Shown here piece by piece: positions 8,932 through 61,450 of a DNA stretch of 61,450 nt (positions are counted from its first letter, which is position 1; every line of letters begins with the position of its first letter). Location of the stretch: assembly GCF_030028105.1 (NCBI RefSeq), contig NC_092373.1:45427451-45488900 (forward strand), written 5' to 3'. This DNA is from Mobula birostris. Lineage: Eukaryota. The position numbers were made by a program, and so were the translations under genes. The notes beneath the pieces are model-generated. The model was not told the DNA's origin. It saw only the letters and a program-made list of their open reading frames with translations, and searched no databases.

Positions 8932-9190
8932 AGAACACACATTAAAGTTGCTGGTGAACGCAGCAGGCCAGGCAGCATCTCTAGGAAGAGGTGCAATCGG
9001 CGTTTTGGGCCGAGACCCTTCGTCAGGACTGACGAAGGGTCTCGGCCCGAAACGTCGAGTCCTGACGAAGGGTCTTGGCCCGAAACGTCGACTGCACCTC
9101 TTCCTAGAGATGCTGCCTGGCCTGCTGCGTTCACCAGCAACTTTGATGTGTGTTGCTTGAATTTCCAGCATCTGCAGAATTCCTGTTGTT
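8932..9190. mobile_element. Penelope-derived inverted-repeat insertion with tandem hammerhead cores
   Basis: About 95-bp inverted arms; 12-bp TSD AGTGATCCTCTG (8920-8931 and 9191-9202); tail on the right arm only. Confidence 0.9.
9058..9093 (+). ncRNA. Minimal type I hammerhead ribozyme motif (Penelope-associated)
   Basis: AGUC-CUGACGA-A-GGGU(CUUG)GCCC-GAAA-C-GUC^GACU: intact core, stem I AGUC/GACU, stem II, palindromic ACGU in place of stem III. Confidence 0.8.
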
Positions 9191-24823: not shown

Positions 24824-25388
24824 TTTTAAAAACGCAAACACGAGGAATTCTGCAGATGCTGGAAATTCAAGCAACACACATCAAAGTTGCTGGTGAACGC
24901 AGCAGGCCAGGCAGTATCTCTAGGAAGAGGTACAGTCGACGTTTCAGGCCGAGACCCTTCATCAGAACTAACTGAAGAAAGAGCCAGTAAGAGATTTAAA
25001 AGTGGAAGGGGGAAGATCCAAAATGATAGGAGAAGACAGGAGGGGGAGGGATGGAGCCAAAAGCTGGACAGGTGATGGGCAAAAGGAGTATGAGAGGATC
25101 ATGGGACAAGAGGCCCAGGGAGAAGGAAAAGGGGGAGGGGCCTCCTGTCCCATGATCCTCTCATACTCCTTTTGCTAATCACCTGTCCAGCTCTTGGCTC
25201 CATCCCTGCCCCTCCTGTCTTATCCTATCATTTTGGATCTCCCCCTCCCCCTCCCACTTTTAAATCTCTTACTAGCTCTTTCTTCAGTTAGTCCTGATGA
25301 AGGGTCTGGGCCTGAAACGTCGACTGTACCTCTTCCTAGAGATGCTGCCTGGCCTGCTGCGTTCACCAGCAACTTTGATGTGTGTTGC
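24824..25388. mobile_element. Penelope-derived inverted-repeat insertion
   Basis: Left arm (minus, with tail) to about 25140 and right arm 25141-25388; 10-bp TSD ATACAACTAA (24814-24823 and 25389-25398); hammerhead motifs at 24934-24969 (-) and 25290-25325 (+). Confidence 0.9.
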
Positions 25389-29155: not shown

Positions 29156-32110
29156 GGGGCGTATAGCCCGGTGAGAGTTTGGGGAGCTGGGTTATGCACA
29201 ATAGGCAGCAATTTAAACAGAGAGAGGAGAAATGGGTTAAAAATTCTATATCTGAATGCACGAAGTGTCAGAAATAAGGCGGATGAGCTTGAAGCTCAGG
29301 TGCGAATGGGTAACTATGATGTTGTTGGGATAACGGAGACATGGCTGCAGGGGGATCAGAGCTGGGAATTGAATGTACAAGGGTAAACATGCTATCGAAG
29401 GGACAGAAAGGTGGGCAGAGGGGGTGGGGTGGCCCTGTTGGTGAGGAATGAGATTCAGTCCCTTGCAAGGGGGGGGACATAGAATCAGGAGAAGTAGGAT
29501 CAGTGTGGATAGAACTGAGGAACAGTAAGGGCAAAAAAACCCTAATAGGTGTTAACTACAGGCCCCCAAACAGTAGCATGGATATTGGGTGCAAGTTAAA
29601 TAGGGAGTTAACAATGGCATGTGGCAAAGGAAATGTCGCAGTAGTTATGGGAGATTTCAACATGCAGGTGAACTGGGAAAATCAGGTTGGTACTGGACCC
29701 CAGGATAGGGAGTTTGTAGAGTGCCTACGGGATGCATTTTTGGAGCAGGTTGTATGAGAGCCGACCAGGGATAAGGCTATTCTGGATTTAGTGTTGTGCA
29801 ATGAACAGGATTTGATAAGTGATCTTGAAGTAAAGGAGCCACTAGGAGGTAGTGACCATAATATGATAAGTTTTTATCTGCAAGTTGAGAGGGATAAGGG
29901 CAGATCAGAAGTGTCAGTATTGCAGTTGAACAAAGGAGACTATGGAGCCATGAGGGAGGAGCTGGCCAAAGCTGACTGGTCGGATATCCTAGCAGAAAAG
30001 ACAGTGGAACAGCAATGGCAGGTATTCTTGGGAATAATGCACAAGGTGCAAAATCAGTTCATCCCCCGGAGAAGGAAGGATTCAAAGGGGGGAAAGTGGC
30101 CACAGTGATTGACAAAGGAAGTCAGAGATAGCATGCATTAAAAAAGTATAACAGAGCTAAGGTGAGTGGGAAGAGGGATGATTGGGAAATTTTTAAGGAG
30201 CAACAGAATTTAACTAAAAAGGCAATATGGGGACAAAAAAATGAGGTATGAACGCAAGCTAGCTGGGAATATAAAGGAGGATAGCAAAAGTTTTTTTTAG
30301 GTATGTGGAGAGAAGGAAGATAGTTAAGAACAATGTTGGGTCCTTGAAGAATGAATTGGGAGAAATTGTTATGGGAAACAGAGAAATGGCAGATGAATTT
30401 AATAAGTACTTTGGATCTGTCTTCACTAGGGAAGACACAAGCAATTTCCCAGATGTATGGATAGGCCAAGGACATAGGGTAACAGAGGAACTGAAACAGA
30501 TTGACATTAGGAAGGAAACGGTGATGAGTAGACTGATGGGACTGAAGGCTAACAAATCCCCAGGTCCAGATGGTCTGCATCCTAGGGTACTAAAGGATGT
30601 GGCTCTGGAAATTGCGGCTGCATTGGTGATCATTTTCCAATGTTCCTCAGATTCAGCATCAGTTCCTGAGGATTGGCGAATGGCTAATGTTATCCCACTT
30701 TTTAAGAAAGGAGGGAGGGAGAAAACAGAGAACTATCGCCCTGTTAGCCTAACATCAGTAGTGGGGAAGATGCTAGAGTCCATTATTAAAGATGAAATAG
30801 CGGCATATCTTGATAGCAGTGATAGGATTGGGCCGAGCCAGCATGGATTTACCAAGGGCAAATCATGCTTGACTAATCTATTCGAGCTTTTCGAGGATGT
30901 AACCAGGAAGATAGACGTGGGAGATCCAGTGGATGTGGTGTTCCTTGACTTTCAGAAGGCATTTGATAAGGTACCATATAGGAGATTGGTGGGTAAAATC
31001 AGAGCTCATGGCATTGGGGGGAGCATATTGACATGGATAGAAAACTGGCTGGCAGATAGAAAGCAAAGGGTAGCAGTGAATGGGTGTTTCTCGGAATGGC
31101 AGGTGGTGACTAGTGGGGTGCCACAGGGCTCGGTATTGGGACCACAGTTGTTTACGATTTACGTCAATGATTTAGAGGAAGGCATTGTGAATAACATCAG
31201 CAAGTTTGCTGATGATACTAAGCTGGGTGGCAGTGTGACATGTGGTGAGGATGTTAGGAGAATTCAAGGTGACTTGGATAGGCTGGGTGAGTGGGCGGAA
31301 ACTTGGCAGATGGCATTTAATGTGAATAAGTGTGAGGTTATTCACTTTGGGAGCAAGAACAGGAAGGCGGATTATTATCTGAACGGCGTGGAGTTAGGTA
31401 GGGGAGAAATACAAAGAGATCTAGGAGTACTTGTTCATCAGTCTCTGAAGGTGAATGAGCAAGTGCAGCAGGCAGTGAAGAAGGCTAATGGAACGTTGGC
31501 CTTTATTACAAAGGGAATTGAGTACAAGAGCGAGGAAATCCTTTTGCATTTGTACAGGGCCCTGGTGTATTGTGTGCAGTTTTGGTCTCCAGGGCTAAGG
31601 AAGGACATCCTGGCTGTGGAGGAGGTGCAGCGTAGGTTCACTAGGTTAATTCCTGGGATGTCCGGACTGTCTTACGCAGAGAGGTTAGAGAGACTGGGCT
31701 TGTACACGCTGGAATTAAGGAGATTGAGGGGGGATCTGATTGAGACATATAAGATTATTAAGGGATTGGACAAGATAGAGGCAGGAAATATGTTCCAGAT
31801 GCTGGGAGAGTCCAGTACCTGAGGGCATGGTTTAAGAATAAGGGGTAGGTCATTTAGGACAGAGTTGAGGAGGAACGACTTCTCCCAGAGAGTTGTGGAG
31901 GTGTGGAACGTGCTGCCTCAGAAGGCAGTGGAGGCCAATTCTCTGGATGCTTTCAAGAAGGAGCTAGATAGGTATCTTATGGATAGGGGAATCAAGGGTT
32001 AGGGGGACAAGGCAGGAACCGGGTATTGATAGTAGATGATCAGCCATGATCTCAGAATGGCGGTGCAGGCTCCAAGTGCTGAATGGTCTACTTCTGCACC
32101 TATTGTCTAT
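29156..32110 (+). mobile_element. Near-complete CR1 ORF2 (APE endonuclease + RT) with 3' UTR, inactivated
   Basis: LKILYLNARS...GITETWL, MGDFN and GGSDH (EN); 505-aa RT ORF 30305..31822 with KFADD; several stops and frameshifts; CTATTGTCTAT tail. Interrupts an older minus-strand CR1 (about 29000-29155 and 32111-32715). Confidence 0.93.
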
Positions 32111-37965: not shown

Positions 37966-38720
37966 GTTCTTCCTTGCCCTTGCCCCCATTAGTTCTTCGT
38001 CATTTTGCAATAGTATATTGTAAGGCAATATGCTATCCATGTGTCTCTTACTCATCCATAGAATATCATGTCTACTAAGTATGGAATCCCCTTCCTGTCA
38101 CTACTCTAAACCGATTCTAGGACTCACAAACTTATTTTAAAAGACTCTTTATAACTCATGTTATCAGTTTTGTTTTTTATTTGTACAGTTTGTCTTCGTT
38201 TGAACATCGGCCGCCTGTCTTTATGTATAATTTTCGGAAATTTTATGATGTTTCATTTTCCCTTTAAATGCTTGGAAGAAAATGAATCTCAAAGCAGTAT
38301 ATAGTAACATATACGTACTTTGATAATAGTTTACTTTGAACTTTTGAATTAACTCAAATCACCTGACCTTCCAGAAGACACCAGAATGCAGCTCCCTCTC
38401 CTTTAAGCGGAGGGGTGGTTTCTGTGTTTCAGAGGGATTCGAGCCGCCAATTCTCTGCCCGAGTACTGCCCAGTGAGGTAGCTGACGACAGCGCTCCTCC
38501 CTTGCTTCAGTGGAGGTGCTGGGGTAGGCAGAAGCCACCTCACCTGGCAGGACGACGTCTGCAGTTGGCGCCCACCGAACTTTCCAGCGCTGACCGCGTT
38601 AAAGGTTAAATCAACGGGGTGCTGTGCGCGCGTCCAAACACTGCCAGGCACGTGCCAGTGAGCGAGGCGCGCTCCCGAGCCGTCAGCAGCGGCGGCAGCT
38701 GCAGCAGGCTGAGGCTGGGA

Positions 38721-38756
38721 GAGCCAGAGCCAGAGCCGGAGCCGGAGCCGGAGCCG
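38721..38756 (+). repeat. (GAGCCR)6 hexamer repeat in the putative 5' UTR
   Basis: GAGCCA x2 followed by GAGCCG x4. Confidence 0.9.
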
Positions 38757-38832
38757 TCGCTGAGTACAGTACCTGACCTCGCGTGGTTGGGCGGCCCAGC
38801 CGCGCAGAAGTGAGGGAGGCGGCCGCAGTGCG

Positions 38833-38908
38833 ATGGAGCATTGCACCAAGCGCAGGCTCACTCACATCGCTATCGGATTACTCTTTCTCTTCAGCGGCAT
38901 CGAGTACG
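38833..38908 (+). CDS. MFSD8-like major facilitator superfamily transporter, coding exon 1
   Basis: GCGATGG Kozak context; MEHCTKRRLTHIAIGLLFLFSGIEY + G; GTAAGG donor; phase joins exon 54001. Confidence 0.88.
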
Positions 38909-39446
38909 GTAAGGACTGGGCGGTATGGAGCGGGCACAGCCGGTACGCCATTTAAACCCCTACCCCCGGCCATTGTCGGCTCAGTTTCCACAATCTCGTC
39001 CCGCCCCATCCTCTGATCCATTACTGTGATTCAAGTCAGCCTTGAATGGGGCGATTTACTGGAGTTGGATGTTCAATTCGGGCCACTTGAGGCCAGTTTA
39101 GGCAAAAAAGAGGAAGTAACAGGCGAGGATTGATATAGTGGACAGTGAGTCGTGGTCGTGGTTCATGATTTGACGTACAGTATAGTGACTCTGGGTTGGG
39201 CAACGTATAACTTTAAGTAGACCTACCTTAATCAGTTGACGAAGGAGTGAAGAAGGCTATGTTCTTTCTCAGACCTCTAAGACTGTACTGGACCCTTCCA
39301 ACTTAACCTGATGTTAAATTAATTTTGCATTCTACTTGTTTGCCACGTTAATAATGGGACGAGCTTAAACATACTTAGAAGGAAACATTCAAACACACAT
39401 TAGTTCAGGTACTGAATTAAGTTACAATCATGTGCCTTCCATATGA

Positions 39447-39634
39447 TCAACACACATCAAAGTTGCTGGTGAACGCAGCAGGCCAGGCAGCATCTCTAGG
39501 GAGAGGTACAGTCGACGTTTCGGGCCGAGACCCTTCGTCTCTTCCTAGAGATGCTGCCTGGCCTGCTGCATTCACCAGCAACTTTGATGTGTGTTGCTTG
39601 AATTTCCAGCATCTGCAGAATTCCTCGTGTTTGC
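39447..39634. mobile_element. Short Penelope-derived inverted-repeat insertion
   Basis: 13-bp TSD GCCTTCCATATGA (39434-39446 and 39635-39647); left arm breaks inside the hammerhead core. Confidence 0.9.
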
Positions 39635-42169: not shown

Positions 42170-42482
42170 CAGAGGTAATCCGTTAGTCTCGCGAGACCAT
42201 GGATCTGCACCTGGAAAGTCTTCACTCTTTTGGGCGCAGCCCTGGGCAAGGTTGTATGGAAGACCAGCAGTTGCCCATACAGTAAGTCTCCCCTCTCCAC
42301 AACACCAATGTTTTCCAAGGGAAGGGCATTAGGACCCATACAGCTTGGCACCAGTGTCGTCGCAGAGTGCTGTGTGATTAAATGCCTTGCTCAAGGACAT
42401 AACACACTGCCTCGGCTGGGGCTCGAACTCACGACCTTCAGTTTGCTAGTCGAACGCCTTAACCACTTGGCCACGTGCCCAC
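42170..42482 (-). mobile_element. tRNA-derived SINE nested in CR1
   Basis: Reverse complement of the 21858-22167 family; 11-bp TSD ACCTGTCTAGT (42159-42169 and 42483-42493). Confidence 0.88.
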
Positions 42483-43345
42483 ACCTGTCTAGTAGTCTCT
42501 TAAATTTCACGAGTGTATCTGCCTCCATCACTGACTCAGGCAGTGTATTTGTATTCCACGCACCAACCACTTTCTGAGTAAAAAACCTTCTTCTAATATC
42601 CCCCTTGAACTTCCCACCCCTTACCTTAAAGCCATGTCCCCTTGTATTGAGCAGTGGTGCCCTGGGGAAGAAGTGCTGGCTATCCACTCTATCTATTCCT
42701 CTTAATATCTTGTATATCTCTATCATGTCTCCTCTCATCCTCCTTCTCTCCAAAGAAGCCCTAGCTCCCTTAATCTCTGATCATAATTCATACTCTCTAA
42801 ACCAGGCAGCGTCCTGGTAAATCTCCTCTGTACCCTTTCCAGTGCTTCCACATCCTTCCTGTAGTGAGGTGACCGGAACTGGACACAGTACTCTAAGTGT
42901 GGCCTAACCAGAGTTTTATAGAGCTGCATCATTACCTCGTGACTCTTAAATTCTATCCCTCGACTTATGAAAGCTAACACCCCATAAGCGTTCTTAACTA
43001 CCCTATCTATCTGTGAGGCAACTTTCAGGGATCTGTGGACATGTACCCTCAGATCCCTCTGCTCCTCCACACTACCAAGTATCCTGCCATTTACTTTGTA
43101 CTCTGCCTTGGAGTTTGTCCTTCCAAAGTGTACCACCTCACACTTCTCCAGGTTGAACTCCATCTGCCACTTCTCAGCCCACTTCTGCAACCTATCAATG
43201 TCTCTCTGCAACCTTCAACAATCCTCTGCACACTAACTACAACACCACCAACCTTTGTGTCATCTGCAAACTTGCCAACCCACCCTTCTACCCCCACATC
43301 CAGGTTGTTAATAAAAATCATGAAAAGTAGAGGTCCCAGAACCCA

Positions 43346-43526
43346 TCGACTGCACCTCTTCCTAGAGATGCTGCCTGGCCTGCTGCGTTCACCAGCAACT
43401 TTTATGTACAATTATAAAGGAATAGGTCACCCACTAGAAAGGACAAAAGATTTGATTCCAAACTATATTATTGCAAATATAGATAGATAGATATGTTTAA
43501 GAGAATAAATACCTGTTTTCAATATG
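43346..43526. repeat. Inverted 181-bp duplicate of 57793-57973 inserted in CR1 RT
   Basis: Base-by-base reverse-complement match with 2 mismatches; interrupts the VTSGVPQGSVLGP coding sequence. Confidence 0.95.
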
Positions 43527-46099
43527 AGACACCACTAGTCACAAGCCTCCAATCCGAATGTACTCCCTCCACCACCACCCTCTGCCTTCTATAGGCAAGC
43601 CAATTTTGAATCCACCTGGCCAAACTTCCCTGGATCCCATGCCTTCTGACTTTCTGAATAAGCCTACCGTGTGGAGCCTTGTCAAATGCAAAGGCTTACT
43701 GGCTTTCCATGCAGCCTTGGATCACCTGGATAATAGAGATACCTACTTCAGACTGCTGTTTATTGATCACAGCTCAGTATTCAACACCCTCCTACCCCCA
43801 GTACCAATCAACAAGCTCCAAAACCTGGGCCTCTGTACCTCCCTCTGCAACCGAATCCTTGACTTCCTCAGCGGTAGACCATAGTCATTGCAAATTAGAA
43901 ATAGCTTCTCCTCATTGACAATCAACATCCATAGTCCTCTGCTTTACACTCTCTTCACCCAGGACTGTGTTACTAGGCACAGCTTGAATGCCATCTCTAA
44001 ATTTCCCAATGAAACAACTATTGTTGGCAGAATTTCAGATGCAGAAGTGAGATCAGCTGGTTGAGTGGTATCACAATAAGAAGCTTGCACTCAACATTAG
44101 GGAAATGATTATTGTCTTCAGAAAATGGAAGCCGATGGAACATACATCAGTCCTCATTGACGATCAGCGGTGGAAAGGGAGAGCAGTTTCAAGTTGCTGG
44201 GTGTCAAAATCTCTGAGAATTTATCCTGAGACCAACATAATGATGCAAAGAAGGCACGACAGCAGCTACATTTCATTAGTGGTTTGAGGAGACTTGTAGA
44301 GATATATTGTGGAGAGCATTCTAACTGGTTGCATCACTGTTTTGTACAGAGGGGTGACTGCACAGGATTGGAAAAAGCTTCAGAAAGTTGCAAGCTCAGC
44401 CGGCTCCATCATGGGCACTACCTCTGCGGTGTCAAGGACACTTTTAAAAGGCGATGCCTCAGAAAGGTGGCATCTATCATTAAAGACTCCCATCACTCAG
44501 GACATGCCTTCTTCTCGTTCTCATCAAAGAGGAGGGTCAGATGCTTGAAGACACAAACTCAACATTTTAGGATCAGTTTCTTACCCTTCTCCATCAGATT
44601 TCTGAATGGACAATACAATACATGTATACTACACTATTTCCCCTTTTTGCTCTCTTTTTGTAGTACTTATTTGACTTTTTAATATACATTTCTTACTGTA
44701 ATTTGCTTTTTATTATTACGTATTGCAATGTACTGCTGCCGCAAAACAACAAATTTTCGACATATGCCAGTAATATTAAACCTGATTCTGATTACAGCAG
44801 CAGAGTACACTGAATGGCAATCATGATCATGTATGGCATTCTTGCCTTTATTAATTGAGGCATTGGGTTTAAGAACAAAAGTTTTGTTGCATCTTTATAA
44901 AACTCTGGTTAGGCTGCAGGGGTATTTCATTCAATTCTGGATGTCTGAGACCTCCTGATGTCGAGGCTTTGGAGAGGGTGTAGGAGAGGTTTACCTGGAC
45001 TTTGCTAGAGGGCATGTTATGTAAGCAGAGGTTAGACCAACTGTGATTGTCCTCTTTTTCTCTTCTTCCCCAACCCTGACCTATAGAAATGTGCAGCCTG
45101 GAAATGGCAAAAACATTAATTTGACAGCACCTTGCACAATACAATGGGATTTAATTTGGGTAGTGGGAGGAATTTGATAGGGATTTCTACCGTGTATTGG
45201 GATCATGTAGATTGTAGCTTAATGCTCCAGCCACATAGGAGAGAAATAAACTGACACCCAGCTACATTAGGAACCTTGGCTTTGCTGGTTTATCACTATC
45301 AGTTTTTGAAAGTGATTGTATTAAGAAAAGCACTTGAAAGACTAAATGCAAGGTAACTTTTTTAAAACGAAAGGTCCAAAGTAAGTGATAGTTATTTGCA
45401 TCAAAATCAAGAGGGGAAATGGTTATTTTGCTTAGATTTTAATGCCAAGCTTGTTGTACACGTTCAAGGCAAAGTTCTCAAAGCGCCTCTCCCATACTGA
45501 GCTCCATGTTGACATTTTCCTGACAAATCCAGGCCAGTGTTCCAGGTCACTGAACTTTTATCAGACTATTTCATTTGGCACCTGCTTTGATTCTATAACC
45601 AATTGAAGTGAGGTTTCCTAGGAAAGAAGTTGCAGTCTGCTTTGTGCAAATTGGTCAGTTCTAGTTTGCAAATTAATTCAGCTATGATTAAATTATTTAT
45701 TCATATAAAATAAACTACCAAGCTCTAGAACAGCCATGAAACATTCCTCCAGTAATTCTGAGAAAACTTGTGTAAAATATTTTCAATTTGTCTTAGAAAG
45801 CATTGTCAAATGTGGGGAAATCATTATCTTAATTTTCATTTCAGTTTTATGTTCAATTATGAGCCGATATTGAATGAGTTGTGTTACTATTTAAAAAGAG
45901 AAAATTGAGATTGACATTGAATTTTTCCACAAGTTATTTTATTTGTGGAAAAAAGTGGTTTTGTAGAACTGTATGGAAAACACTGCTGTATTAATGTGAA
46001 AATGTCTAATGACATTGAATTCTGACAACTTTTGTTGTACCAATCCACAGATTTTGTTCCATCTCATTGTTTTCAGTCATTGATATTCACAGTGGCATT

Positions 46100-47650
46100 T
46101 CTGAGCTTAAGAGGAAGATTGTCAAAGAATACAGGATAAAAATCAGTTGCAAATTTGGGTGAAGAAACAACAGATGAAGTTTAATCTGGAGAAGTGTAAA
46201 TTGTTCCATTTAGGGAGATCAAAAGCAAGAAGAAAGTATGCGATAAATGGCAGGACCTTAGGAACATTGTGCAGAGTGTTGGATGTTGGGATGAAGTGCC
46301 AATGCGAGTGTGGCAAAGCCTTGCATGCTTGTTTTTATCAGGGCATTAAGAATAAAGTTGGGATTCATTTTGTAGTTGTATAAAACTTCAGTTAAATCAT
46401 ATTTGGACAATTGTGTGCAGTTCTGGTTGGTACACTATTGGACAGATGTGGCTATGGAGAAATTGAACCCGTTTTGCACTAGGATATTGCCATGATTTGA
46501 GTGTATTAGCGAAATGGAGAAATTTTCTAAATGTAAATAGTTTTCTCTGGAGTGTTGAACACCGGAGGATAAACTGATGGAAATGTATAATGTGAGGCAG
46601 ACATAGGAAAGATCATTAGAGTCTAGTTTCAAATACTAAAGAGTATGTGTTTAGGCAAGAAGGGGCAAATTTAAAGGAGACATATAAGGTAAAAATGTTG
46701 TACAACATTAAGTGCCTGGTTCTTGTAGTTTCATATGCAGCATCTTGTTAAAGGCCTTCTGAAAATCCAAGTATACAACATCCACCAATACTCCTTTGTC
46801 TATCCCCCTTGTTATTTCCTCAGAGAATTCTAACAGCTTTGTCAGGCAAGATCTTCCTTGAGGAAACCATGCTGACTTTGGCCTATTTTACCATGTGCCT
46901 CCAAGTACCCTGACACCATATCCTTAACAATCACTCCAACCACTAATGTCAAGCTAATTAGCCTATAATTTCCTTTTTTTCTGCCTTCATCCCTTGAAGA
47001 GTGGAGTGACATTTGCAATTTTCCAGTTCATTGGAATCATTCCAGAATTGGGTGATTTTTGAAAGATCATTACTAATGCCTTGATAATCTCTTCAGCTAC
47101 TTCTTTCAGAACCCTAGGGTGTAGTCCATCTGGTCTTGGTGACTTATCTACCTTCAGACCTTTCAGCTTCCCAAGCACATTCACCCTAATAATGGCAACT
47201 GTACTCACTTCTGTCCCCTGACACTCTCTAACTTCCAGCATACTGCTGGTGTCTCCCACAGTGAATATTGATGCAAAATAATTATCTAGTTTGTCCATCA
47301 TTTCCTTGTCCCCGTTATAATCTCTGTAGCATCATTTTCCAGCATTCTTATATCTACTTTCAAGTCTTGGTCCGGAATGTTGACCGTCCTCTTTTCCATA
47401 GATGCTGCCTGGCCTGCTGAGTTCCTCCAGCATTTTGTGTGTGTTGCGTGGACTTCCAGCATCTGCAGATTTTTCCCTTGTTAGTGGTTGATCTACTCTC
47501 GCCTCTGTTTTACTCTTTATATATCTGAAAAGTATTTGGTATCCTCTTTGATATTGATGGTGTTTCTCTTCTTATTTCATCTCTCCCCCCCCCCCCCCCA
47601 CTGGGATCCTTTAGTTACCTTCTGTTCATTTTTTTAGTGGTTTTCCAATC
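46100..47650. mobile_element. Decayed CR1 fragments (+ about 46100-46710; - about 46725-47650) with a Penelope pLTR piece at about 47360-47480
   Basis: MKFNLEKCK peptide on +; KSPRPDGLHPRVLKE...ANVTPLFK on minus. Confidence 0.7.
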
Positions 47651-50301
47651 CTGAAAAAGCTATCATTCTTCACCTGCAGAGTGCTTTAGTAAAGAACAGT
47701 GTGAAAATATAAGTACTTTCAATAAGCCAAAATGTAATAAAGTTTTGCCATCCCTCCTCTAGTTACCTCATTCTTTTGATTAGTTTTCTTTAACATTGAA
47801 GAAACTGACTTCTCCTTTCACCCTGAAGAAGGGTCTCAGCCCAAGCTGTCTGCTGTTTATTCATTTCCATAGATGCTGCCTGACCTGTTGTGTTCCTCCA
47901 GCATTTTGTGTGTGTTACTGTCTTTTAACCACCCCTTTTTCTAGCTTTTTCCTCTCAAATCATTTTTTTCCTTGTTTTCCTAGAGAGCCTGGGAAAACGT
48001 GTGCGCATGGTTTTACTTTAGTGAGGTGCCCAAATATGACATGGTGGCATATTGATGTATGCCATTCATGTATTTTTCCATTTAACCCATAGTGAATATA
48101 ACCCTTAAAGAATGCTGAATCAAACAATATGTTCACAATATTACTCAAGTATTATTGAAGCATTAAATACACGTCACTCCTATATATACACATACACACA
48201 ATGTATCTATGTACAAACTTGTACAAGAACAAGGTCATCTCAGCACTGGTAAAGAAAAAAAATGAGGGAACTGGAATTTCTTCTGCACATTCCAGTCATT
48301 TTGGTTTGCTATGCATTTTGGTTGGATCATCTCTGCCATAACAGGACTTTTGATTTGCATTAGGGAGAATATGTCAAGAGGAGTGTCCTCTTAATTTTTT
48401 TTCAGGTATTTCCTTTTCCAACGGTAAACAGACAATCTATCATCATTTCCATGATTAGCTGTCCACTTGAATTTCATCTCGTAATTGTGCCCTCCAAGAA
48501 CCACAGCCCACATCTGCATTCATGAAGCTACTGTTAGTGGAAGCCCCTTCTGTGGATTGAAAATGGATACTAGTGGTTGATAATCAGTAATGAGAGCAAA
48601 ATCTCTCCCATGTAAGGACACCCTAAACCAGACTTGAAGCCTTTCTGTCAATGTGTGCATACTTTTTCTCTGCAGTGGTAAGGGAACATGATGCAAAGGC
48701 TATTGGGTGTTCACTTCCATCACTCATAACATGTGACATGACTGTGAGGCATCACAGGGAAAGTTCACAGAATGTGTGAGCACAGTGTCTGACAAAACCA
48801 TTTCCTTTACCATTCTGGAAAGCCACCTCACACTGCTTTGTCCATTGCCATATTTTCCTGTAGTAATGAGTTCAATGGGTGCAATAGCCAGGTTTGGCAA
48901 GAATTTGTTAGAGTAATTGACAAATTTTAAAATGGACTACAGCTGTGACATGCCGTTTTGGCCTTGGGGCATCCATCGCTACTTGAATTTTCTCAGAACA
49001 CTTGTGTAATGCTTGTGCATAAATGGTGTAACCACAGTAAGTGAGGCATTGTTTAAGGAAATTACACTTGTTGCATCCTGCTCTGAGCCCATAATCTTAT
49101 AATCTTTTTAACTCTGTCTTGAGATTTTGGAGATGCTCTTTGTCACCTTCACCAGTAACAATTATGTCATCCAGGTAACACAGAGTGTCTAGGCAACCTT
49201 GTAGTATCTGGTCCATAGCTTTTTACCAGAATGCAGGTGCAGATGCTACTCCAAAAATAAGCCTATTATAGCAATAAAGTGCTTTGAGTGTTTATGGTGA
49301 GAAATACTTTGGACTCTTCCAACTCCATCTGTAATTAGGCCTCACCTAAGTCCATTTTTTTCTCTTCAGTATAATTTCTTAGTCGGATATCTGCAGGCTT
49401 CAGTTCGGAATCTTTGAAATGCCTTTCAAAGTCATTTTGTAAAATGACTGAAACAGCTGAGCCAGAGTCCAATTTCATTCTAATTAATTTGCTGTTAACT
49501 TCTGGCATAAGCCATATTGCTTATCTGTTGTGTTTTCACATTTTAAATTTCAATGCTATGCAGTCCTGTGTCACACTCAGTACTAACAGATTTTTAATCG
49601 ACAGCATATAGATTAGTGTTCTTTTTGAAACTTCAATTTTACTTTAGTAATTCATTTTTTTAATCTTTTTCTCTTCCTTGTGTAATCCATTAATTTTTGT
49701 CTGCTTGACATGCTCTTTGTATGTTGCGTTTTCTGCAAGTTTCACCTTTATATCTGCATTGGTCTGGCATATGCATCACGATGGTAACACTTCGTTTGGC
49801 CAGGCAGATTTCTGTTTTGAAGTTGCAATTTTGTTAATCTTTTGTTCTTTCATTCACTTAATTTTTTTGTTCACTTTCGCTCACAAAAATATTCTGTTCA
49901 CTTTCATTCTTATCTGCACCTCTGGCTGCTGTTTCCATGGATACACCCATTTCAGTTTTTAAATGTGAGATGTTAGAAAACGTTATTGAATATTTAATTT
50001 GTGGAATCTTGTAAGAAAGCAATCTCTCAGTGCATCACTAAGCCCACCACTGAACTGATAGTGCTTAGACAAGCTCTTCAATTTGATCGTGTACGCTGAA
50101 ATAGACTCCCTGTCCTTTTGATTCCATTTATGAAACCAAAAGCTTTCTGCAGTCAATATTTATTTCAGTTTTAAATGTTCCTGCCAAACTCAGTTCAGGT
50201 GGTTTGGTTGGAGCAGTCAAACTTTTAAGCAAATTGTATCCTCTTTCACCTATTGCACTCAGTAGCACTGACACTTGTTTTTTGTTTGTTATTTTCATTT
50301 G

Positions 50302-51693: not shown

Positions 51694-52245
51694 GTAGATA
51701 GTTGTGTTGGGTTCATTTTAAAATTTACTTGTCGCCACCATTATGCTTTGTAATTCCAGAAACTTTTCAAAAGAAAAACTTGGAAGCCTGGCAGGACATG
51801 TAGGCTTAGTTTTACTTGCCTGAGGTGCTCAAATATGAAGTGGTGGCATAATGACATATGCCAGTCATGTATGTTTACATTTATTCTGTACTGAATTGTG
51901 AAAACAGCAAAGAATAATTAATCAAACAATATATTCACAATATTACTCATATTACTGAATTAATAAATACATAACATTCCTGTTTTTCTGTTGCTCTTTA
52001 TTTTTGTATAGGAAATTCACCAGTTTGCATGAGTATGACTTGGTAACTAAAGAAATCACATTGAATACAAAATTACTGTCTAAAGGACCAGTTTTAACTT
52101 CTGATTTACTTGAAACAATTACGCTTTACCATCCAAATATTGTAATTGTGCTCATTCAAACAGTAGATGAGCCACACCAGTGTGTATAATTTGATGCTGC
52201 TAAATGTAGATTACTGTTGCAAGAAAAAGTAATGCGTGTATTGAA

Positions 52246-53935
52246 AACGCAAACATGAGGAAATCTGCAGATGCTGGAATTTCAAGCAACATGCATAAAA
52301 GTTGCTGGTGAGCACAGCAGGCCAGGCAGCATCTATAGGAAGAGGTACAGTCGACGTTTCGTGCTGAGACTCTTCATCAGGACTAACTGAAGAAAGAGCT
52401 AGTAAGAGATTTGAGAGGGGGAGGGGGAGATCCAAAATGATAGGAGAAGACAGGAGGGGGAGGGATGGAGCTAAGAGCTGGACAGTTGATTGGCAAAAGG
52501 GATATGAGAGGATCACGGGACGGGAGGCCTAGGGAGAAAGAAAGGGGGAGGCGGGAAGCCCAGAGGATGGGCAATAACAGATGGGGTACGAGGGGGATGT
52601 GGGGCATTAACAGAAGTTAGAGAAGTCAATGTTCATGCCATCAGGTTGGAGGCTACCCAGACAGAATATAAGGTGTTGTTCCTCCAACCTGAGTGTGGCT
52701 TCATCTTTATAGTAGAGGAGGCCATGTCTACTATAAGTCTACGGACTCTCACAGCTATCTGGACTATTCCTCTTCTCGCCCTGTCTCTTGCAGAAATGCC
52801 ATCCCCTTCTCGCAATTCCTCTGTCTCCGCTGCATCTGCTCTCAGGATGAGGCTTTTCATTCCAGGATGAAGGAGATGTCCTCCTTTTTTTTTAAAGAAA
52901 GGGGCTTCCCTTCCTCCACCATCAACTCTGCTCTCAAACGCATGTCTCCCATTTCACGCACATCTGCTCTCACCCCATCCTCCCACCACCCCACTAGGAA
53001 TAGGGTTCCCCTTGTCCTCACCTATCACCCCACCAGCCTCCGGGTCCAACATATAATTCTCTCTAACTTCCGCTACCTCCAACTGGATCCCACCACTAAA
53101 CATCTTTCGCTCCCCCCTCGCTTTCCGCAGGGATCACTCCCTACACAACTCCCTTGTCCATTCATCCTCCCCATCCCTCCCCACCGATCTCCCTCCCGGC
53201 ACTTATTATTGTAAACGGAACAAGTGCTACACATGCCCTTACACTTCCTCCCTCACTACCATTCAGGGCCCCAGACAGTCCTTCCAGGTGAGGCGACACT
53301 TCACCTGTGAGTCGGCTGGGGTGATATACGCGTCTGGTGCTCCCGATGCGGCCTTCTATATATTGGTGAGGCCCGACACAGACTGGGAGATTGTTTCGCT
53401 GAACACCTATGCTCTGTCTGCCAGAGAAAGCAGGATCTCCCAGTGGCCACACATTTTAATTCCACGTCCCATTCCCACTCTGATATGTCTATCCACGGCC
53501 TCCTGTACTGTAAAGATGAAGCCACATTCAGGTTGGAGGAACAACATCTTATATCCCGTCTGGGTAGCCTCCAACCTGATGGCATGAACATTGACTTCTC
53601 TAACTTCTGTTAATGCCCCACATCCCCCTCGTACCCCATCTGTTATTGCCCATCCTCTGGGCTCCCCCTCCCCCTTTCTTTCTCCCTAGGCCTCTCGTCC
53701 CATGATCCTCTCATATCTTTTTTGCCAATCAACTGTCCAGCTCTTGGCTCCATCCCTCCCCCTCCTGTCTTATCCTATCATTTTGGATCTCCCCCTCCCC
53801 CTCCCACTTTCAAATCTCTTACTAACTCGTCTTTCAGTTAGTCCTGACGAAGGATCTCAGCCCGAAACATCGACTGTACCTCTTCCTATAGATGCTGCCT
53901 GGCCTGCTGTGTTCACCAGCAACCTTTATGTGTGT
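52246..53935. mobile_element. Penelope-like element, 5'-truncated with inversion; RT C-terminus and GIY-YIG endonuclease on +
   Basis: YYKSTDSHSYLDYSSSRP...ERGFPSSTI and HFTCESAGVIY...YIGE...HFNS peptides (52724-53613); left arm 52246-52726 is the reverse complement of about 53494-53938 plus tail; TSD TGCRTGTATTGAA (52233-52245 and 53936-53948). Confidence 0.92.
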
Positions 53936-54000
53936 TGCATGTATTGAATGCCATTGTTCAGTTTGTAATCTAAAACTCTTTCTTTAAACTGTCGTTTCAG

Positions 54001-57612: not shown

Positions 57613-57912
57613 TATGATTGAAGGATGACGCCTTAGAATAAAAGTAATAAATCTACTTGCAAAGAGCAAATAAGTAGGAATAGACTACATAGTGAAACAC
57701 TGAAAGCCGACAAGGTTTTAAAATGTAAGCGAGAATGTGATTAAACGGATCAAGAGATTTAAATAGTGAACTTTTTTTATATTCATGAACAGCATATTGA
57801 AAACAGGTATTTATTCTCTTAAACATATCTATCTATCTATATTTGCAATAATATAGTTTGGAATCAAATCTTTTGTCCTTTCTAGTGGGTGACCTATTCC
57901 TTTATAATTGTA

Positions 57913-58442
57913 CCTAAAAGTTGCTGGTGAACACAGCAGGCCAGGCAGCATCTCTAGGAAGAGGTGCAGTCGACGTTTCAGGCCGAGACCCTTCGTCAGG
58001 ACTAACTGAAGGAAGAGTTAGTAAGAGATTTGAACCCCATCCGTTATTTATTTTTATACACACATTCTTTCTCTCACTCTCCTTTTCTCCCTCTGTCCCT
58101 CTGACCATACCCCTTGCCCATCCTCTGGGTTCCCCCCCACCCTTGTCTTTCTCCCCGGACCTCCTGTCCCATGATCCTCTCATATCTCCTTTGCCAATCA
58201 CCTGTCCAGCTCTTGGCTCCATCCCTCCCCCTCCCGTCTTCTCCTATCATTTTGGATCTCCCCTCGCCCTCCCACTTTCAAATCCCTTACTCACTCTTCC
58301 TTCAGTTAGTCCTGACGAAGGGTCTCGGCCTGAAACGTCGCCTGCACCTCTTCCTAGAGATGCTGCCTGGCCTGCTGCGTTCACCAGCAACTTTTATGTG
58401 TGTTGCTTGAATTTCCAGTATCTGCAGAATTCCTGTTGTTTG
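57913..58442. mobile_element. Penelope-derived inverted-repeat insertion (donor of the 43346-43526 copy)
   Basis: Left arm 57913-58034 (minus), right arm 58035-58442 with tail; 14-bp TSD CCTTTATAATTGTA (57899-57912 and 58443-58456). Confidence 0.92.
57968..58003 (-). ncRNA. Minimal type I hammerhead ribozyme motif
   Basis: Minus strand reads AGUC-CUGACGA-A-GGGU(CUCG)GCCU-GAAA-C-GUC^GACU; predicted cleavage between 57972 and 57971. Confidence 0.75.
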
Positions 58443-59145
58443 CCTTTATAATTGTATCAGCTCCAGACTTCGAGGTGAATGGTCCTAGGTTTGAATCCAG
58501 CTGCCTCCTTGCATACTTTCCATCCATGCTGGGTTGAGCATAAAGCTAGCAACACAGCCTCATTTTAAAAAAAAACATAGAGAAATGCTCAAGAAACGGC
58601 AAGGTTGCCCTCCCGATGTGTCACAAGGTGCAGAGAGGAACAACAATCAAATTTATTACCATATTTTATTTCCCATGTGACATATTTGCTGATAAATTGT
58701 CCATCTTTCTATTGTTCAAAGTGGAAGAGAAATAGGAATTCTAATATGTTGATAATTTTTTTTAACCTAGCTGTTAATTGTTTTTCTGGTGATCTTATTA
58801 TCTTTAAATATTTGCTGAATATTATTTAATTTCTTAGTAAACAATTATTATCTCATTACTTATTTATTTTCTTTTCTGTAAAGTCTTCACCAACCCACAT
58901 TTCAACCTTCAGCTCAAGAAACAGAAAAAAGTATCAATTTTTGCCTTATCTTTTTGGGAAAAAAAATGTTGTTGAAATTTAGTTCACATCAAGCTGTTTT
59001 GGAAATGATTATTTGCAGGGGACAGGAATTATTCATTTTGTTCTCTATGAACTCAACCAATCAAATACTGAATATTAGATTCTAGTAAATGATGCTGTAC
59101 TTGCCTTGATGCTCCCAAGAAAAGGAATAAATTCATTTCTTGCAG

Positions 59146-59579: not shown

Positions 59580-59768
59580 GAGGTTCTGTAGAGGTTGGAA
59601 ATCCAGCATAACGCATACAAAATGCAGGAGGATCTCAACAGGTCAGGCAGCATCTCTGGAAAAGAACAAACAGTTGATGTTTCAGGTCAAGATCCTTCAT
59701 TAGTTTATTCCTTTCCATTGATGCTGCCTGAACTGCTGAGTTCCTGCAGCATTTTGTAAGTGTTACTC
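59580..59768. mobile_element. Old Penelope mini inverted repeat (second subfamily)
   Basis: ACAAAATGCAGGAGGATCTCA...CAGGCAGCATC and GATGCTGCCTGA...AGCATTTTGT arms; hammerhead degenerate. Confidence 0.7.
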
Positions 59769-60601: not shown

Positions 60602-61450
60602 CACTGGGCAACAAATTTTTCGAAAGTGCTGCTTCCTTAGAATTTTTGTTTATGATGGACCACAAAGCTGAACACAATTATAATTTCTGATTGCACAATG
60701 GAATTTGGAGAAACAAGAAATTAACTTTTATTGACTACAGTGTGCTTTGTAGTAGTTTTACTAGGCTAAAATGTTTTGTTGATGATGTTGATTTTTGTTT
60801 GTACATAGTGTCTGAGGCATCTCCCTTAAATGTCCAACTATAATCAGCCAACGTTGATGGATTCCTGTTGCCCCGATACCGTTTCTTCATAACTGCGATG
60901 TCCTGGTGAAACCTTTCACCATGTTCATCACTGTCAGCACCAATATTTGCAGGGAAGAATGGGAATGCAGGAAGTGAATGTTTAGTGACATGTTGCACTT
61001 CATGGCTTTGTTTGCTTGAAGCATGTTGTCAACCAGCTGCACATAGTTTGGTTTTTAAACGCAAACAACAGGAATTCTGCAGATGCTGGAAATTCAAGCA
61101 ACACACATCAAAGTTGCTGGTGAACGCAGCAGGCCAGGCAGCATCTCTAGGATATCCCTTACTCACTCTTCCTTCAGTTAGTCCTGACGAAGGGTCTCGG
61201 CCTGAAACGTCGACTGCACCTCTTCCTAGAGATGCTGCCTGGCCTGCTGTGTTCACCAGCAACTTTGATGTGTGTTGCACATAGTTTGGTACTCTGTAGT
61301 TGCCAAGAAGATTTTTCAACAGCATCCTTGAATGCCCTCCATGTGACTTTTCTCTGGTCCACGAGAAGTTCTTGGAATTTTCTGTCATTAATGACCTGTT
61401 TGATCTGTGGACCAACAAAAATACCTTTCTTAATTTTGGCATCAGTTATT
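60602..61450 (-). mobile_element. Probable Chapaev3 (CMC superfamily) DNA transposon relic, 3' end
   Basis: Minus-strand peptides DAKIKEGIFVGPQI, LGNYRVPNY and FFPANIGADSDEHGERFHQDIAVMKKRY...LADYSWT; CACTGGGCAACAAA terminus at 60602. Family assignment is from motif recall. Confidence 0.7.
61053..61275. mobile_element. Penelope-derived inverted-repeat insertion nested in the Chapaev-like transposase
   Basis: 15-bp TSD TGCACATAGTTTGGT (61038-61052 and 61276-61290); intact hammerhead core at 61180-61215 (+). Confidence 0.9.

What the first reader, a model, noticed from the sequence alone, without database searches (positions are those of the whole stretch)
43346..43526. Host DNA plus Penelope arm copied 14 kb away, starting at a hammerhead cleavage site
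Seen: 43346-43526 is the reverse complement of 57793-57973 (181 bp, 2 mismatches). It comprises about 60 bp of a Penelope arm, its TSD and about 105 bp of unique intron. It interrupts a CR1 RT at the PQGSVLGP motif with loss of only a few target bases, no TSD, no poly(A), and 2-nt microhomologies (TC left, TG right). At both mismatches the copy keeps the family consensus, so the donor mutated afterwards. The donor arm has an intact hammerhead core (57968-58003, minus) predicted to cut GUC^GACU between 57972 and 57971. If the ambiguous TC is assigned to the CR1, the insert starts at 43348, which equals 57971, exactly the first base of the 3' cleavage product. Inference: a ribozyme-processed read-through RNA carrying host flank may have templated the insertion (ribozyme-defined transduction or RNA-templated break repair). 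Ordinary DNA-templated, microhomology-mediated repair from a nearby locus is the competing explanation.
Basis: partly seen in the sequence, partly recalled or inferred. Interest (0 to 1): 0.82.

Follow-up and report, generated by a model that had tools for sequence, protein, structure and literature searches.

The report
Break-repair patch copied from Penelope flank
A 181-base piece of a jumping-gene end plus its neighbouring DNA was copied, flipped and pasted into a broken spot 14 kb away; one edge of the patch sits at a predicted RNA self-cutting site, but the data cannot tell whether RNA or DNA was the template.

Summary
43346-43526 is the reverse complement of 57793-57973, 181 nt with 2 mismatches. 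It carries 59 nt of a Penelope-like (PLE) arm, that insertion's 14-nt target duplication and 106 nt of low-copy flank. It splits a LINE reverse transcriptase at the GVPQGSVLGP motif.

Public contigs of paralogous LINE copies give the likely target before insertion. They show TC microhomology on the left, up to 4 nt (TATG) on the right, 2-4 nt lost, no target duplication and no poly(A). One contig bridges the right junction exactly. Two related organisms seem to hold the flank without the arm or the LINE.

The donor arm has an intact minimal hammerhead core. Its predicted cut falls at the patch edge only if TC is assigned to the LINE.

Against the ribozyme reading:
- The hammerhead is probably antisense to the host gene.
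- It is locked in a ~140-bp hairpin in any full read-through RNA.
- None of the 13 other arm fragments here starts within 2 nt of the cut.

For it: an AATAAA lies 13-17 nt before the patch's other end.

Verdict: a templated break-repair patch whose template is unresolved (DNA about 0.5, ribozyme RNA about 0.2). First readers noted similar cut-site junctions on other pieces of this genome; these are unchecked.

The parts
43346..43526 (+). Inserted patch: the copy, in the sense orientation of the PLE arm
   Evidence: (I1): 181 nt, 99% complementary to 57793-57973; sequences.
43346..43347 (+). TC: left microhomology, shared by the LINE family and the donor
   Evidence: (loose ends and table 5c): LINE paralogues read ...AGATCC... 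at this point; the donor reads ...CGTCGACTG.
43348..43406 (+). PLE arm part of the patch. It runs from the first base after the predicted hammerhead cut to the tail-less arm end.
43407..43420 (+). Copy of the donor PLE's 14-nt target-site duplication
   Evidence: 57899-57912 equals 58443-58456..
43421..43526 (+). Copied low-copy flank. The last 4 nt (TATG, 43523-43526) are probably microhomology with the LINE target.
   Evidence: a single contig at 43460 in each of X1, X4 and X9; joint 43347->43523 with CT between.
42738..43345 (-). LINE reverse transcriptase, the part downstream of the break (WVLGPLLF... onward, with a frameshift)
43527..43695 (-). LINE reverse transcriptase, the part upstream of the break (...RLVTSGV)
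   Evidence: 61% identity to the intact paralogue at 30959-31120.
57793..57973 (-). Donor segment
57913..58442 (.). Donor PLE mini-insertion. The minus arm is 57913-58034 (tail-less), the spacer is 58035-58276, and the plus arm with its tail is 58277-58442. It is flanked by 14-nt TSDs.
   Evidence: (I7).
57967..58004 (-). Minimal hammerhead motif. CUGACGA is at 57999-57993 and GAAAC at 57979-57975. Helix I pairs 58004-58000 with 57971-57967. The predicted cut lies between 57972 and 57971.
   Evidence: There is no Rfam hit.
57810..57815 (-). AATAAA, 13-17 nt upstream of the donor end of the patch
38834..38909 (+). Context: candidate first coding exon in a CpG island. It would place both loci in intron 1 of a plus-strand gene.
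   Evidence: GC 0.63-0.67. ATG, 25 codons, then a GT donor. Inference only.

Best explanation
The patch is a real, recent, lineage-specific templated insertion that repaired a double-strand break in an old LINE copy.

Order of events: a PLE mini-element first inserted at 57913-58442. Afterwards about 175-181 nt spanning its tail-less arm end, its target duplication and the adjoining flank were copied. The copy was joined in inverted orientation at the break.

The junctions use 2 nt of microhomology on the left and up to 4 nt on the right, with 2-4 target bases lost. There is no target duplication and no poly(A).

The most likely template is the nearby DNA itself. The repair route would be synthesis-dependent, microhomology-primed repair (filler-DNA, SD-MMEJ or MMBIR type). 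A 3' end from the right side of the break (...CATA-3' on the minus strand) would prime on the donor at TATG, copy into the PLE arm, detach and re-anneal through TC/GA. Under this reading the edge at the hammerhead cut is a coincidence.

Shown: the sequence relations, the order of events and the junction structure. Inferred: the break, the polymerase route and the DNA nature of the template.
For: - The copy includes the arm, the TSD and the flank, so it was made after the PLE insertion.
- The LINE halves are collinear and in the same orientation, so this is an insertion and not an inversion.
- Microhomology and small target loss come from LINE paralogue contigs. The family reads ...AGATCCTTGTGG... 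and a subfamily joint runs 43347->43523 with CT between (X1 depth 115, X4 134.8, X9 12.3).
- The patch differs from canonical PLE insertions in this window. Those carry 12-14-nt TSDs (4 of 4 examined) and are inverted arm pairs with one tailed end (6 of 6). The patch has neither feature.
- The donor is only 14,266 nt away, in cis and inverted. This is the usual geometry for DNA template switching. Human RNA-derived templated insertions instead mapped to 18 of 24 chromosomes without preference (PMC5110952, passages read).
- The exact X1 contig 43384-43557 bridges the right junction and carries the copy-specific letter at both mismatch sites. This argues against a chimeric-read artefact.
Against: - Two coincidences are unexplained under a DNA template. 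The left edge falls within the 3-position window that includes the predicted hammerhead cut: 3 of 123 arm positions is 2.4%, or about 0.3% over 30-1000 nt. The right edge lies 13-17 nt after an AATAAA (2.4-4.1%).
- A copied tract of 175-181 nt taken 14 kb from the break is not what I recall as typical for polymerase-theta templated inserts (recalled; not checked in a paper here).
- No bridging contig for the left junction appears among the listed pieces.
- In X1 the flank appears only in the LINE context, with no sign of the donor context. I cannot explain this.
Confidence: 0.5

Rival explanations
1. Ribozyme-defined RNA template. A minus-sense RNA starts inside the PLE spacer or arm and reads outward through the tail-less arm into the flank. 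It is cut by the minimal hammerhead after C57972. The 3' product starts at G57971 and perhaps ends at a cryptic poly(A) site near 57793-57797. A break end primes on UAUG. A reverse transcriptase (from the PLE, a LINE or polymerase theta) runs off at the 5'-OH end, and the cDNA is joined to the other break end without microhomology.
For: - The core motif is intact in the donor arm, and helix I (5 bp) and helix II (4 bp) can be drawn.
- The layout matches the published Anolis PLE. The start codon sits in the CUGAUGA box of some copies, the cut comes about 25 nt later, and there are two 3' end classes about 40 nt apart (PMC11167929 main text).
- The left edge fits the cut if TC belongs to the LINE, and the LINE family does have TC there.
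- AATAAA lies 13-17 nt before the other edge.
- Junction features match class 2 templated insertions, which are attributed to RNA (PMC5110952, passages).
- Polymerase theta can reverse transcribe RNA (PMC8195485, title and start of abstract seen in a search listing).
- A second junction at 9057/9058 lies 1 nt past a predicted cut.
- First readers noted cut-site junctions on other pieces of this genome (unchecked).
Against: - It needs transcription antisense to the probable host gene.
- The arm keeps only 63 nt upstream of the cut, so a PLE promoter there is doubtful.
- Any RNA that starts beyond the element folds into a ~140-bp hairpin at -275 kcal/mol, z -21.8, which buries the core.
- The arm alone does not fold as a hammerhead in the minimum-energy structure (z -0.64, -7.7 against -12.2 kcal/mol).
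- Rfam gives no hit.
- Minimal PLE hammerheads act as dimers with low activity. The Anolis one needs the PLE protein, is not required for insertion in vitro, and left no RNA-seq ends at the cut (PMC4209133 Results; PMC11167929 main text).
- 0 of 13 other arm fragments in the window start within 2 nt of the cut.
- There is no poly(A) in the patch.
- A donor 14 kb away requires the RNA to act in cis.
Confidence: 0.2
2. RNA-templated patch with no role for the ribozyme. The nascent plus-sense intron RNA of the host gene, from the same transcription unit as the break, serves as template. The left break end (...CCCATC-3') primes on GA at 57972-57973, and the cDNA is joined at the TATG microhomology.
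For: - If the gene is on the plus strand, this RNA is made whenever the gene is transcribed, and it lies in cis.
- The junction features are class-2-like (PMC5110952, passages).
Against: - Nothing in the sequence requires RNA: there is no splice junction, no poly(A) and no untemplated bases.
- The hammerhead-site and AATAAA coincidences are again unexplained.
- The plus-sense RNA also forms the long hairpin.
Confidence: 0.15
3. Endonuclease-dependent retrotransposition, either PLE-mediated or LINE-mediated 3' transduction of the flank.
For: - The patch contains an element end followed by its flank, as in 3' transduction.
- The PLE protein binds RNA near this region in Anolis, and a weak product primed from the template's 3' end was seen in vitro (PMC11167929 main text).
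Against: - The patch has no TSD, no poly(A) or LINE 3' tail, and no inverted partner arm.
- Its 3' end is not at either of the family's two usual end classes.
- Canonical PLE insertions in the window have 12-14-nt TSDs (4 of 4) and paired arms (6 of 6).
Confidence: 0.04
4. Assembly artefact or unresolved structural polymorphism: one of the two copies is not present as drawn in a single haplotype.
For: - In X1 the only contig over the shared 121 nt runs straight through both points where a k=31 graph should fork if the donor context were in the same reads.
- No bridging contig for the left junction appears among the listed pieces.
- PLE inverted structures are known to trouble assemblies (PMC8557442, passage read).
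Against: - The two mismatches, each with the ancestral state in the copy, are not what a chimeric join produces.
- The X1 contig matches the copy exactly across the right junction.
- The TSD logic ties the flank to the donor.
- Contigs in X4 and X9 show the flank outside the LINE.
- The tool itself warns that a hole proves nothing.
Confidence: 0.08

Closest known systems
Class 2 templated sequence insertions (TSI/TSIP) at double-strand breaks in human cells (Onozawa et al., as reviewed in PMC5110952)
   Same: - A donor-derived patch with the donor left intact.
- No target duplication and no poly(A).
- Microdeletion and microhomology at the junctions.
   Different: Human patches came from distant loci on many chromosomes and were tied to RNA by inhibitor and RNA-transfection experiments. 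Here the donor is 14 kb away in cis, and no RNA evidence exists.
Filler-DNA, SD-MMEJ or MMBIR template-switch insertions (established knowledge, recalled; not read here)
   Same: - Microhomology at both junctions.
- A nearby donor in inverted orientation.
- Small target loss.
   Different: Those models give no reason for an edge at an RNA processing site. The enzyme involved cannot be inferred from sequence.
Minimal hammerhead ribozymes of Penelope-like elements (PMC4209133) and the Anolis PLE mechanism (PMC11167929)
   Same: - The core motif lies in the pLTR.
- Helix I is short, there is an unpaired base before helix II, and there is no helix III.
- Two 3' end classes (the 'tail') are present.
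- Arms occur as inverted 5'-truncated pairs.
   Different: No published role for the cut site in defining insertion ends. The authors found cleavage unnecessary for insertion in vitro and saw no RNA ends at the cut.
Ribozyme-defined 5' ends of non-LTR retrotransposons (R2 and L1Tc HDV-like ribozymes; PMC3774820 and PMC3185411, seen as search listings and abstract starts only)
   Same: [quoted passage not shown]
   Different: In those elements the ribozyme sits at the element's own 5' end and frees it from a co-transcript. Here a hammerhead near a 3' end would free a fragment that consists mostly of host flank.
LINE 3' transduction (established knowledge, recalled)
   Same: An element end plus its downstream flank is moved together.
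   Different: The patch has no TSD and no poly(A). Only 59 nt of the element is present.

Membership tests
Minimal hammerhead ribozyme of PLEs (Cervera & de la Pena 2014) | Conserved core: CUGANGA, then GAAA, then a cleavage triplet ending in H17 | tested here: met
   CUGACGA...GAAAC GUC at 57999-57972 on the minus strand. There are 8 motif matches in the window against 0.00 in 100 shuffles.
Minimal hammerhead ribozyme of PLEs (Cervera & de la Pena 2014) | Short helix I (4-5 bp), helix II with an unpaired base at its 5' end, and no helix III or loop (dimer design) | tested here: met
   helix I is 5 bp including one G-U pair, and helix II is 4 bp after an unpaired A. ACGU is self-complementary. 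The criteria come from the PMC4209133 Results.
Minimal hammerhead ribozyme of PLEs (Cervera & de la Pena 2014) | Recognised by a curated covariance model | tested here: not met
   no hammerhead family at the gathering threshold or at E up to 10. This is expected if Rfam's models require helix III (recalled).
Minimal hammerhead ribozyme of PLEs (Cervera & de la Pena 2014) | Self-cleavage at the predicted site | not testable with these tools
   The sequencing runs offered were contigs only, and contigs cannot show RNA ends.
Canonical PLE insertion | TSD, an inverted or tandem partner arm, and a 3' end at one of the two family end classes | tested here: not met
   For the patch: no TSD, a single arm, and an end that runs 120 nt past the arm end. 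The donor element meets all three.
Class 2 templated sequence insertion | No TSD, no poly(A), microdeletion and/or microhomology, donor intact | tested here: met
Class 2 templated sequence insertion | RNA origin of the patch | not testable with these tools
   The patch has no splice junction. No raw RNA reads were on offer.
LINE-type 3' transduction | TSD and a poly(A) or LINE 3' tail at the insertion | tested here: not met
Microhomology-mediated DNA template switch (SD-MMEJ/MMBIR) | Microhomology at both junctions and a nearby donor | tested here: met
   TC on the left and up to TATG on the right; 14,266 nt between the arms. These features are compatible with the class but not exclusive to it.

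The most novel reading that the evidence does not exclude
The patch is a DNA fossil of a defined small RNA. This RNA would be the 3' product of in vivo cleavage by a minimal Penelope hammerhead, with its 5'-OH at G57971. It would read out of a tail-less arm into host flank and end about 15 nt after a cryptic AAUAAA. It would then be reverse transcribed to its very 5' end and used to patch a chromosome break. If so, PLE hammerheads do cut in vivo, and their products can carry host sequence to new sites.
Probability: 0.2. Interest if true: 0.8.

Novelty: new member of a known kind. Interest (0 to 1): 0.45.

Why it matters
What PLE hammerheads do in vivo is an open question. Craig et al. 2021 call their function 'still unclear', and Frangieh et al. 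2024 saw no RNA ends at the cut. If insertion edges across this genome pile up at the base after GUC, genomic junctions would give the first in vivo record of cleavage. They would also show a new way for host sequence to be moved.

This one event cannot establish that. It does define the exact genome-wide test. It is also a clean, dated example of a templated break-repair patch in a non-mammalian animal genome, with donor, target and order of events all resolved.

Tried and rejected
- **Inversion with duplicated breakpoints.** Rejected. The two LINE halves are collinear and in the same orientation across the patch, and the PLE is continuous across 57973/57974.
- **Gene conversion between two PLE arms.** Rejected. 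There is no homology on the flank side.
- **Template switching during the LINE's own retrotransposition.** Unlikely. It needs two switches that return within 2-4 nt, and a plus-sense RNA.
- **Rfam.** Nothing at the gathering threshold over the whole window. Only chance-level non-hammerhead hits appeared at E up to 10 over 57850-58480.
- **Pfam.** No hit on the short LINE pieces or on two PLE-internal ORFs at E up to 0.01. Only the intact paralogue scored.
- **No intact copy of the same LINE subfamily spans the break within the window**. The family sequence came from public contigs instead.
- **Enrichment at the cut within the window.** 0 of 13 other arm fragments begin within 2 nt of the cut. 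One internal junction (9057/9058) lies 1 nt past a cut. This is too few to test.
- **Earlier notes of this scan.** None for this window. There were titles only for three related notes elsewhere in the genome.
- **Literature.** A search for hammerhead + transduction + Penelope listed 4 papers. None is about this, judging by title and start of abstract.
- **Supplements were not opened.** Fig. S2 of PMC11167929 (RNA ends) and the supplementary alignments of PMC4209133 (vertebrate minimal hammerheads) may bear on the cleavage claim.
- **The host gene was not identified.** Its strand rests on one candidate exon. The species is unknown to me because organisms are coded.

Full report
**1. The observation**

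The window holds an inverted repeat of 181 nt, 43346-43526 against 57793-57973, 99% complementary with 14,266 nt between the arms (pair I1). Reading both stretches gives two mismatches: 43386 (C in the copy, T in the donor) and 43405 (T in the copy, G in the donor). This is far beyond chance.

**2. The donor**

The donor lies at the left end of a Penelope-like (PLE) mini-insertion, 57913-58442.
- The insertion is made of two inverted arms, 57912-58034 and 58277-58399, 123 nt and 96% complementary (I7). A 242-nt pyrimidine-rich spacer sits between them, and the right arm carries an extra ~43-nt tail.
- It is flanked by a 14-nt target-site duplication, 57899-57912 and 58443-58456.

The family is abundant in the window. 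All 6 inverted pairs have one short end and one end about 40 nt longer. All 4 pairs whose flanks I read have 12-14-nt duplications; the pairs at 24826-25388 and 52245-53945 were not examined.

This matches the published PLE signature of inverted 5'-truncated copies and a 30-40-bp 'tail' at one end (PMC8557442, passages read). It also matches the two internal reverse-transcription start sites shown for an Anolis PLE (PMC11167929, main text read).

**3. What the copy holds**

Mapped base for base, the copy contains:
- TC at 43346-43347;
- 59 nt of arm at 43348-43406;
- the 14-nt duplication at 43407-43420;
- 106 nt of flank at 43421-43526.

Because it carries the arm/duplication/flank joint, it must have been made from the donor locus after the PLE landed there.

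At both mismatches the copy has the family state:
- Site 1 is CG in 6, TG in 3 and CA in 2 of 11 other arms.
- Site 2 is T in 11 of 11.

Four arms of a divergent family were left out of these counts. The partner arm of the same element also agrees with the copy at both sites. So both changes happened in the donor after copying. No donor-specific change is shared by the copy, so the copying may have followed the PLE insertion quickly.

**4. The target**

The patch splits a minus-strand LINE reverse transcriptase between ...RLVTSGV and WVLGPLLF....
- These pieces are 61% and 52% identical to an intact paralogue in the window. That paralogue hits RVT_1 at E 2e-30.
- Naming it CR1-like rests on recall of its C-terminal motifs.
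- The two halves are collinear and in one orientation, which excludes an inversion.

**5. Public contigs**

Only Logan contigs were on offer. I laid 42300-44600 on one run each of four coded organisms, at a 90% identity threshold.

*5.1. The LINE and the arm are very high copy.* Summed depths reach 10^5-10^6. The paralogues give the family sequence across the break. Contigs that leave the window at 43342 continue with a consensus reading AGATCCTTGTGG followed by the right LINE flank (loose ends and table 5c). In reverse-transcriptase sense this is GVPQGSV.

A subfamily joint runs 43347->43523 with only CT between (X1 depth 115, X4 134.8, X9 12.3). The window's copy shares that subfamily's A at 43527. 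So the likely target before insertion read ...CCCATC CT TATG AGACACC....

That gives:
- TC microhomology on the left;
- 2-4 nt lost;
- no duplication and no poly(A).

The exact pre-insertion sequence of this very copy remains an inference. The X9 contig at depth 12.3 is a candidate orthologous empty site.

*5.2. The right junction is bridged.* X1 record 7 is 174 nt at depth 7.7, with no differences. It covers 43384-43557, so it bridges the right junction with 143 and 31 letters and carries the copy-specific letter at both mismatch sites. X1 may be the assembled sample, so this may not be independent. No bridging contig for the left junction appears among the listed pieces; 246,724 pieces were not shown.

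*5.3. Relatives seem to lack both events.* X4 record 20 (388 nt) fits only 43409-43526, with 1 difference. X9 record 29 (296 nt) fits only 43407-43526, with 7 differences. Both run on into unlike sequence at both ends. 43407 is exactly where an empty PLE site would begin to match. I infer that organisms B and C carry the flank without the PLE arm and without the LINE context. That would make both events specific to the lineage of the window. This is an inference from where the alignments end, because I could not see the other letters of those contigs.

*5.4. One unexplained point.* In X1 no other contig lies over 43460. Record 7 runs through both places where a k=31 graph should fork if the identical donor stretch were in the same reads. 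The donor context is therefore not visible in X1. The tool warns that holes prove nothing.

**6. The hammerhead**

The donor arm reads CUGACGA, one unpaired A, a 4-bp helix II with a tetraloop, then GAAAC GUC. A 5-bp helix I can be drawn.
- The motif occurs 8 times in the window against 0.00 in 100 shuffles.
- This is the minimal, helix-III-less design described for PLEs, thought to act as a dimer (PMC4209133, Results read).
- In copies with U at position 7 an ATG lies inside the core box and the cut is about 25 nt later. This parallels the Anolis element, where the cut is given as 26 bp past the start codon (PMC11167929).
- Rfam finds no hammerhead.
- The arm alone does not adopt the hammerhead in its minimum-energy fold (z -0.64). 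The hammerhead-consistent structure scores -7.7 against -12.2 kcal/mol for 53 nt.

No tool here can show cleavage.

**7. Does the ribozyme reading gain or lose?**

*7.1. Points for:*
- The LINE family really has TC at the break, so placing the patch start at 43348 is legitimate.
- AATAAA at 57815-57810 on the minus strand lies 13-17 nt before the donor end of the patch. The fraction of minus-strand positions with such a signal 10-30 nt upstream is 2.4%, or 4.1% if ATTAAA is counted. I found this after the fact.
- A second locus has a junction 1 nt past a predicted cut (9057/9058).
- Three first-reader notes on other pieces of this genome report junctions at the cut. They are unchecked and I could not see their sequences.

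*7.2. Points against:*
- The fit needs one of three equivalent junction placements.
- A CpG island at 38400-39000 (GC 0.63-0.67) holds a plausible first coding exon on the plus strand: ATG at 38834, 25 codons, then a GT donor at 38910. Both loci would then lie in intron 1, and the donor hammerhead would be antisense to host transcription. This is an inference, with no homology or RNA support.
- The minus arm keeps only 63 nt upstream of the cut.
- Any minus-sense RNA that starts outside the element forms a near-perfect ~140-bp hairpin (-275.3 kcal/mol, z -21.8) that buries the core.
- None of the 13 other arm fragments in the window begins within 2 nt of the cut.
- Published minimal PLE hammerheads cleave poorly in vitro (PMC4209133).
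- The Anolis hammerhead needs the PLE protein, is dispensable for insertion in vitro, and left no RNA-seq ends at the cut (PMC11167929).
- The donor is 14 kb away in cis. Human RNA-derived patches came from all over the genome (PMC5110952, passages read).

**8. Weighing**

All readings agree on a templated patch at a double-strand break, joined by short microhomology. I put that at about 0.85-0.9.

For the template:
- Proximity and inverted orientation favour DNA synthesis-dependent repair.
- The two edge coincidences favour a minus-sense RNA with defined ends. Their product is roughly 10^-4 to 10^-3 before allowing for the many features a reader could have found striking.
- That RNA needs three unsupported assumptions: antisense initiation inside the element, escape from the hairpin, and activity of a weak ribozyme.

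My odds:

| Reading | Odds |
|---|---|
| DNA template | 0.5 |
| Ribozyme-defined RNA | 0.2 |
| Other RNA (host-sense intron) | 0.15 |
| Artefact or polymorphism | 0.08 |
| Endonuclease-dependent retrotransposition | 0.04 |
| Unassigned | the rest |

**9. Comparison with what is known**

The patch behaves like a class 2 templated sequence insertion (PMC5110952), or like filler DNA from microhomology-mediated template switching (recalled). It is not a canonical PLE or LINE insertion.

Ribozyme-set 5' ends are known for R2 and L1Tc through HDV-like ribozymes (PMC3774820 and PMC3185411; listing and abstract starts only). They are not known for PLE hammerheads. A search for hammerhead + transduction + Penelope listed 4 papers, none on this by title and start of abstract. 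Polymerase theta can copy RNA in repair (PMC8195485, listing and start of abstract).

**10. Verdict**

The interpretation cannot be decided. As it stands this is a new member of a known kind, a templated break-repair patch. It comes with a specific, cheap genome-wide test that could turn it into evidence for in vivo hammerhead cleavage.

Noticed in passing
window 8934-9190: This PLE mini-insertion has three hammerhead cores, one antisense and two sense. A 29-nt sense fragment runs from the first core base to 1 nt past the predicted cut (9029-9057). It is joined at 9057/9058 to a second sense arm that starts 32 nt before its own cut. The TSD is about 12 nt.
   Followed up: partly
window 38400-39000, exon candidate 38834-38909 (+): A CpG island (GC up to 0.67) holds a candidate first coding exon: ATG, 25 codons with a hydrophobic stretch, then a GT donor. 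It suggests a plus-strand gene whose intron 1 covers 39-61 kb.
   Followed up: partly
window: six inverted PLE pairs (8934-9190, 24826-25388, 39448-39634, 52245-53945, 57913-58442, 61053-61278): Every pair has one arm that ends about 60-73 nt after the predicted cut and one that ends about 100-112 nt after it. This is the 'tail' signature of two reverse-transcription start sites reported for an Anolis PLE.
   Followed up: yes
window 43384-43557, as seen in run X1: A single exact contig runs through the 121 nt shared with the donor without breaking. It looks as if the donor context were absent from that read set. Contigs in X4 and X9 show the opposite, non-LINE context.
   Followed up: partly
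window 47380-47472, 47823-47919, 59609-59767: A second, divergent PLE-like family shares the GATGCTGCCTG block (63-88% to the main family). Its hammerhead region is decayed or different. 59609-59767 is itself an inverted pair.
   Followed up: no
window 24938-24965 (-), 25294-25321 (+), 52353-52380 (-): Copies with U at core position 7 (CUGAUGA) place an ATG inside the hammerhead core. It opens a short frame (MKGLGLKRRL...) that continues across the predicted cut, as described for the Anolis PLE ORF start.
   Followed up: partly
window 52245-53945: This larger PLE copy has long inverted internal segments (52546-52726 against 53494-53674, 94%). Its ORFs resemble the region between the PLE reverse transcriptase and endonuclease. 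Pfam gave no hit at E up to 0.01.
   Followed up: partly
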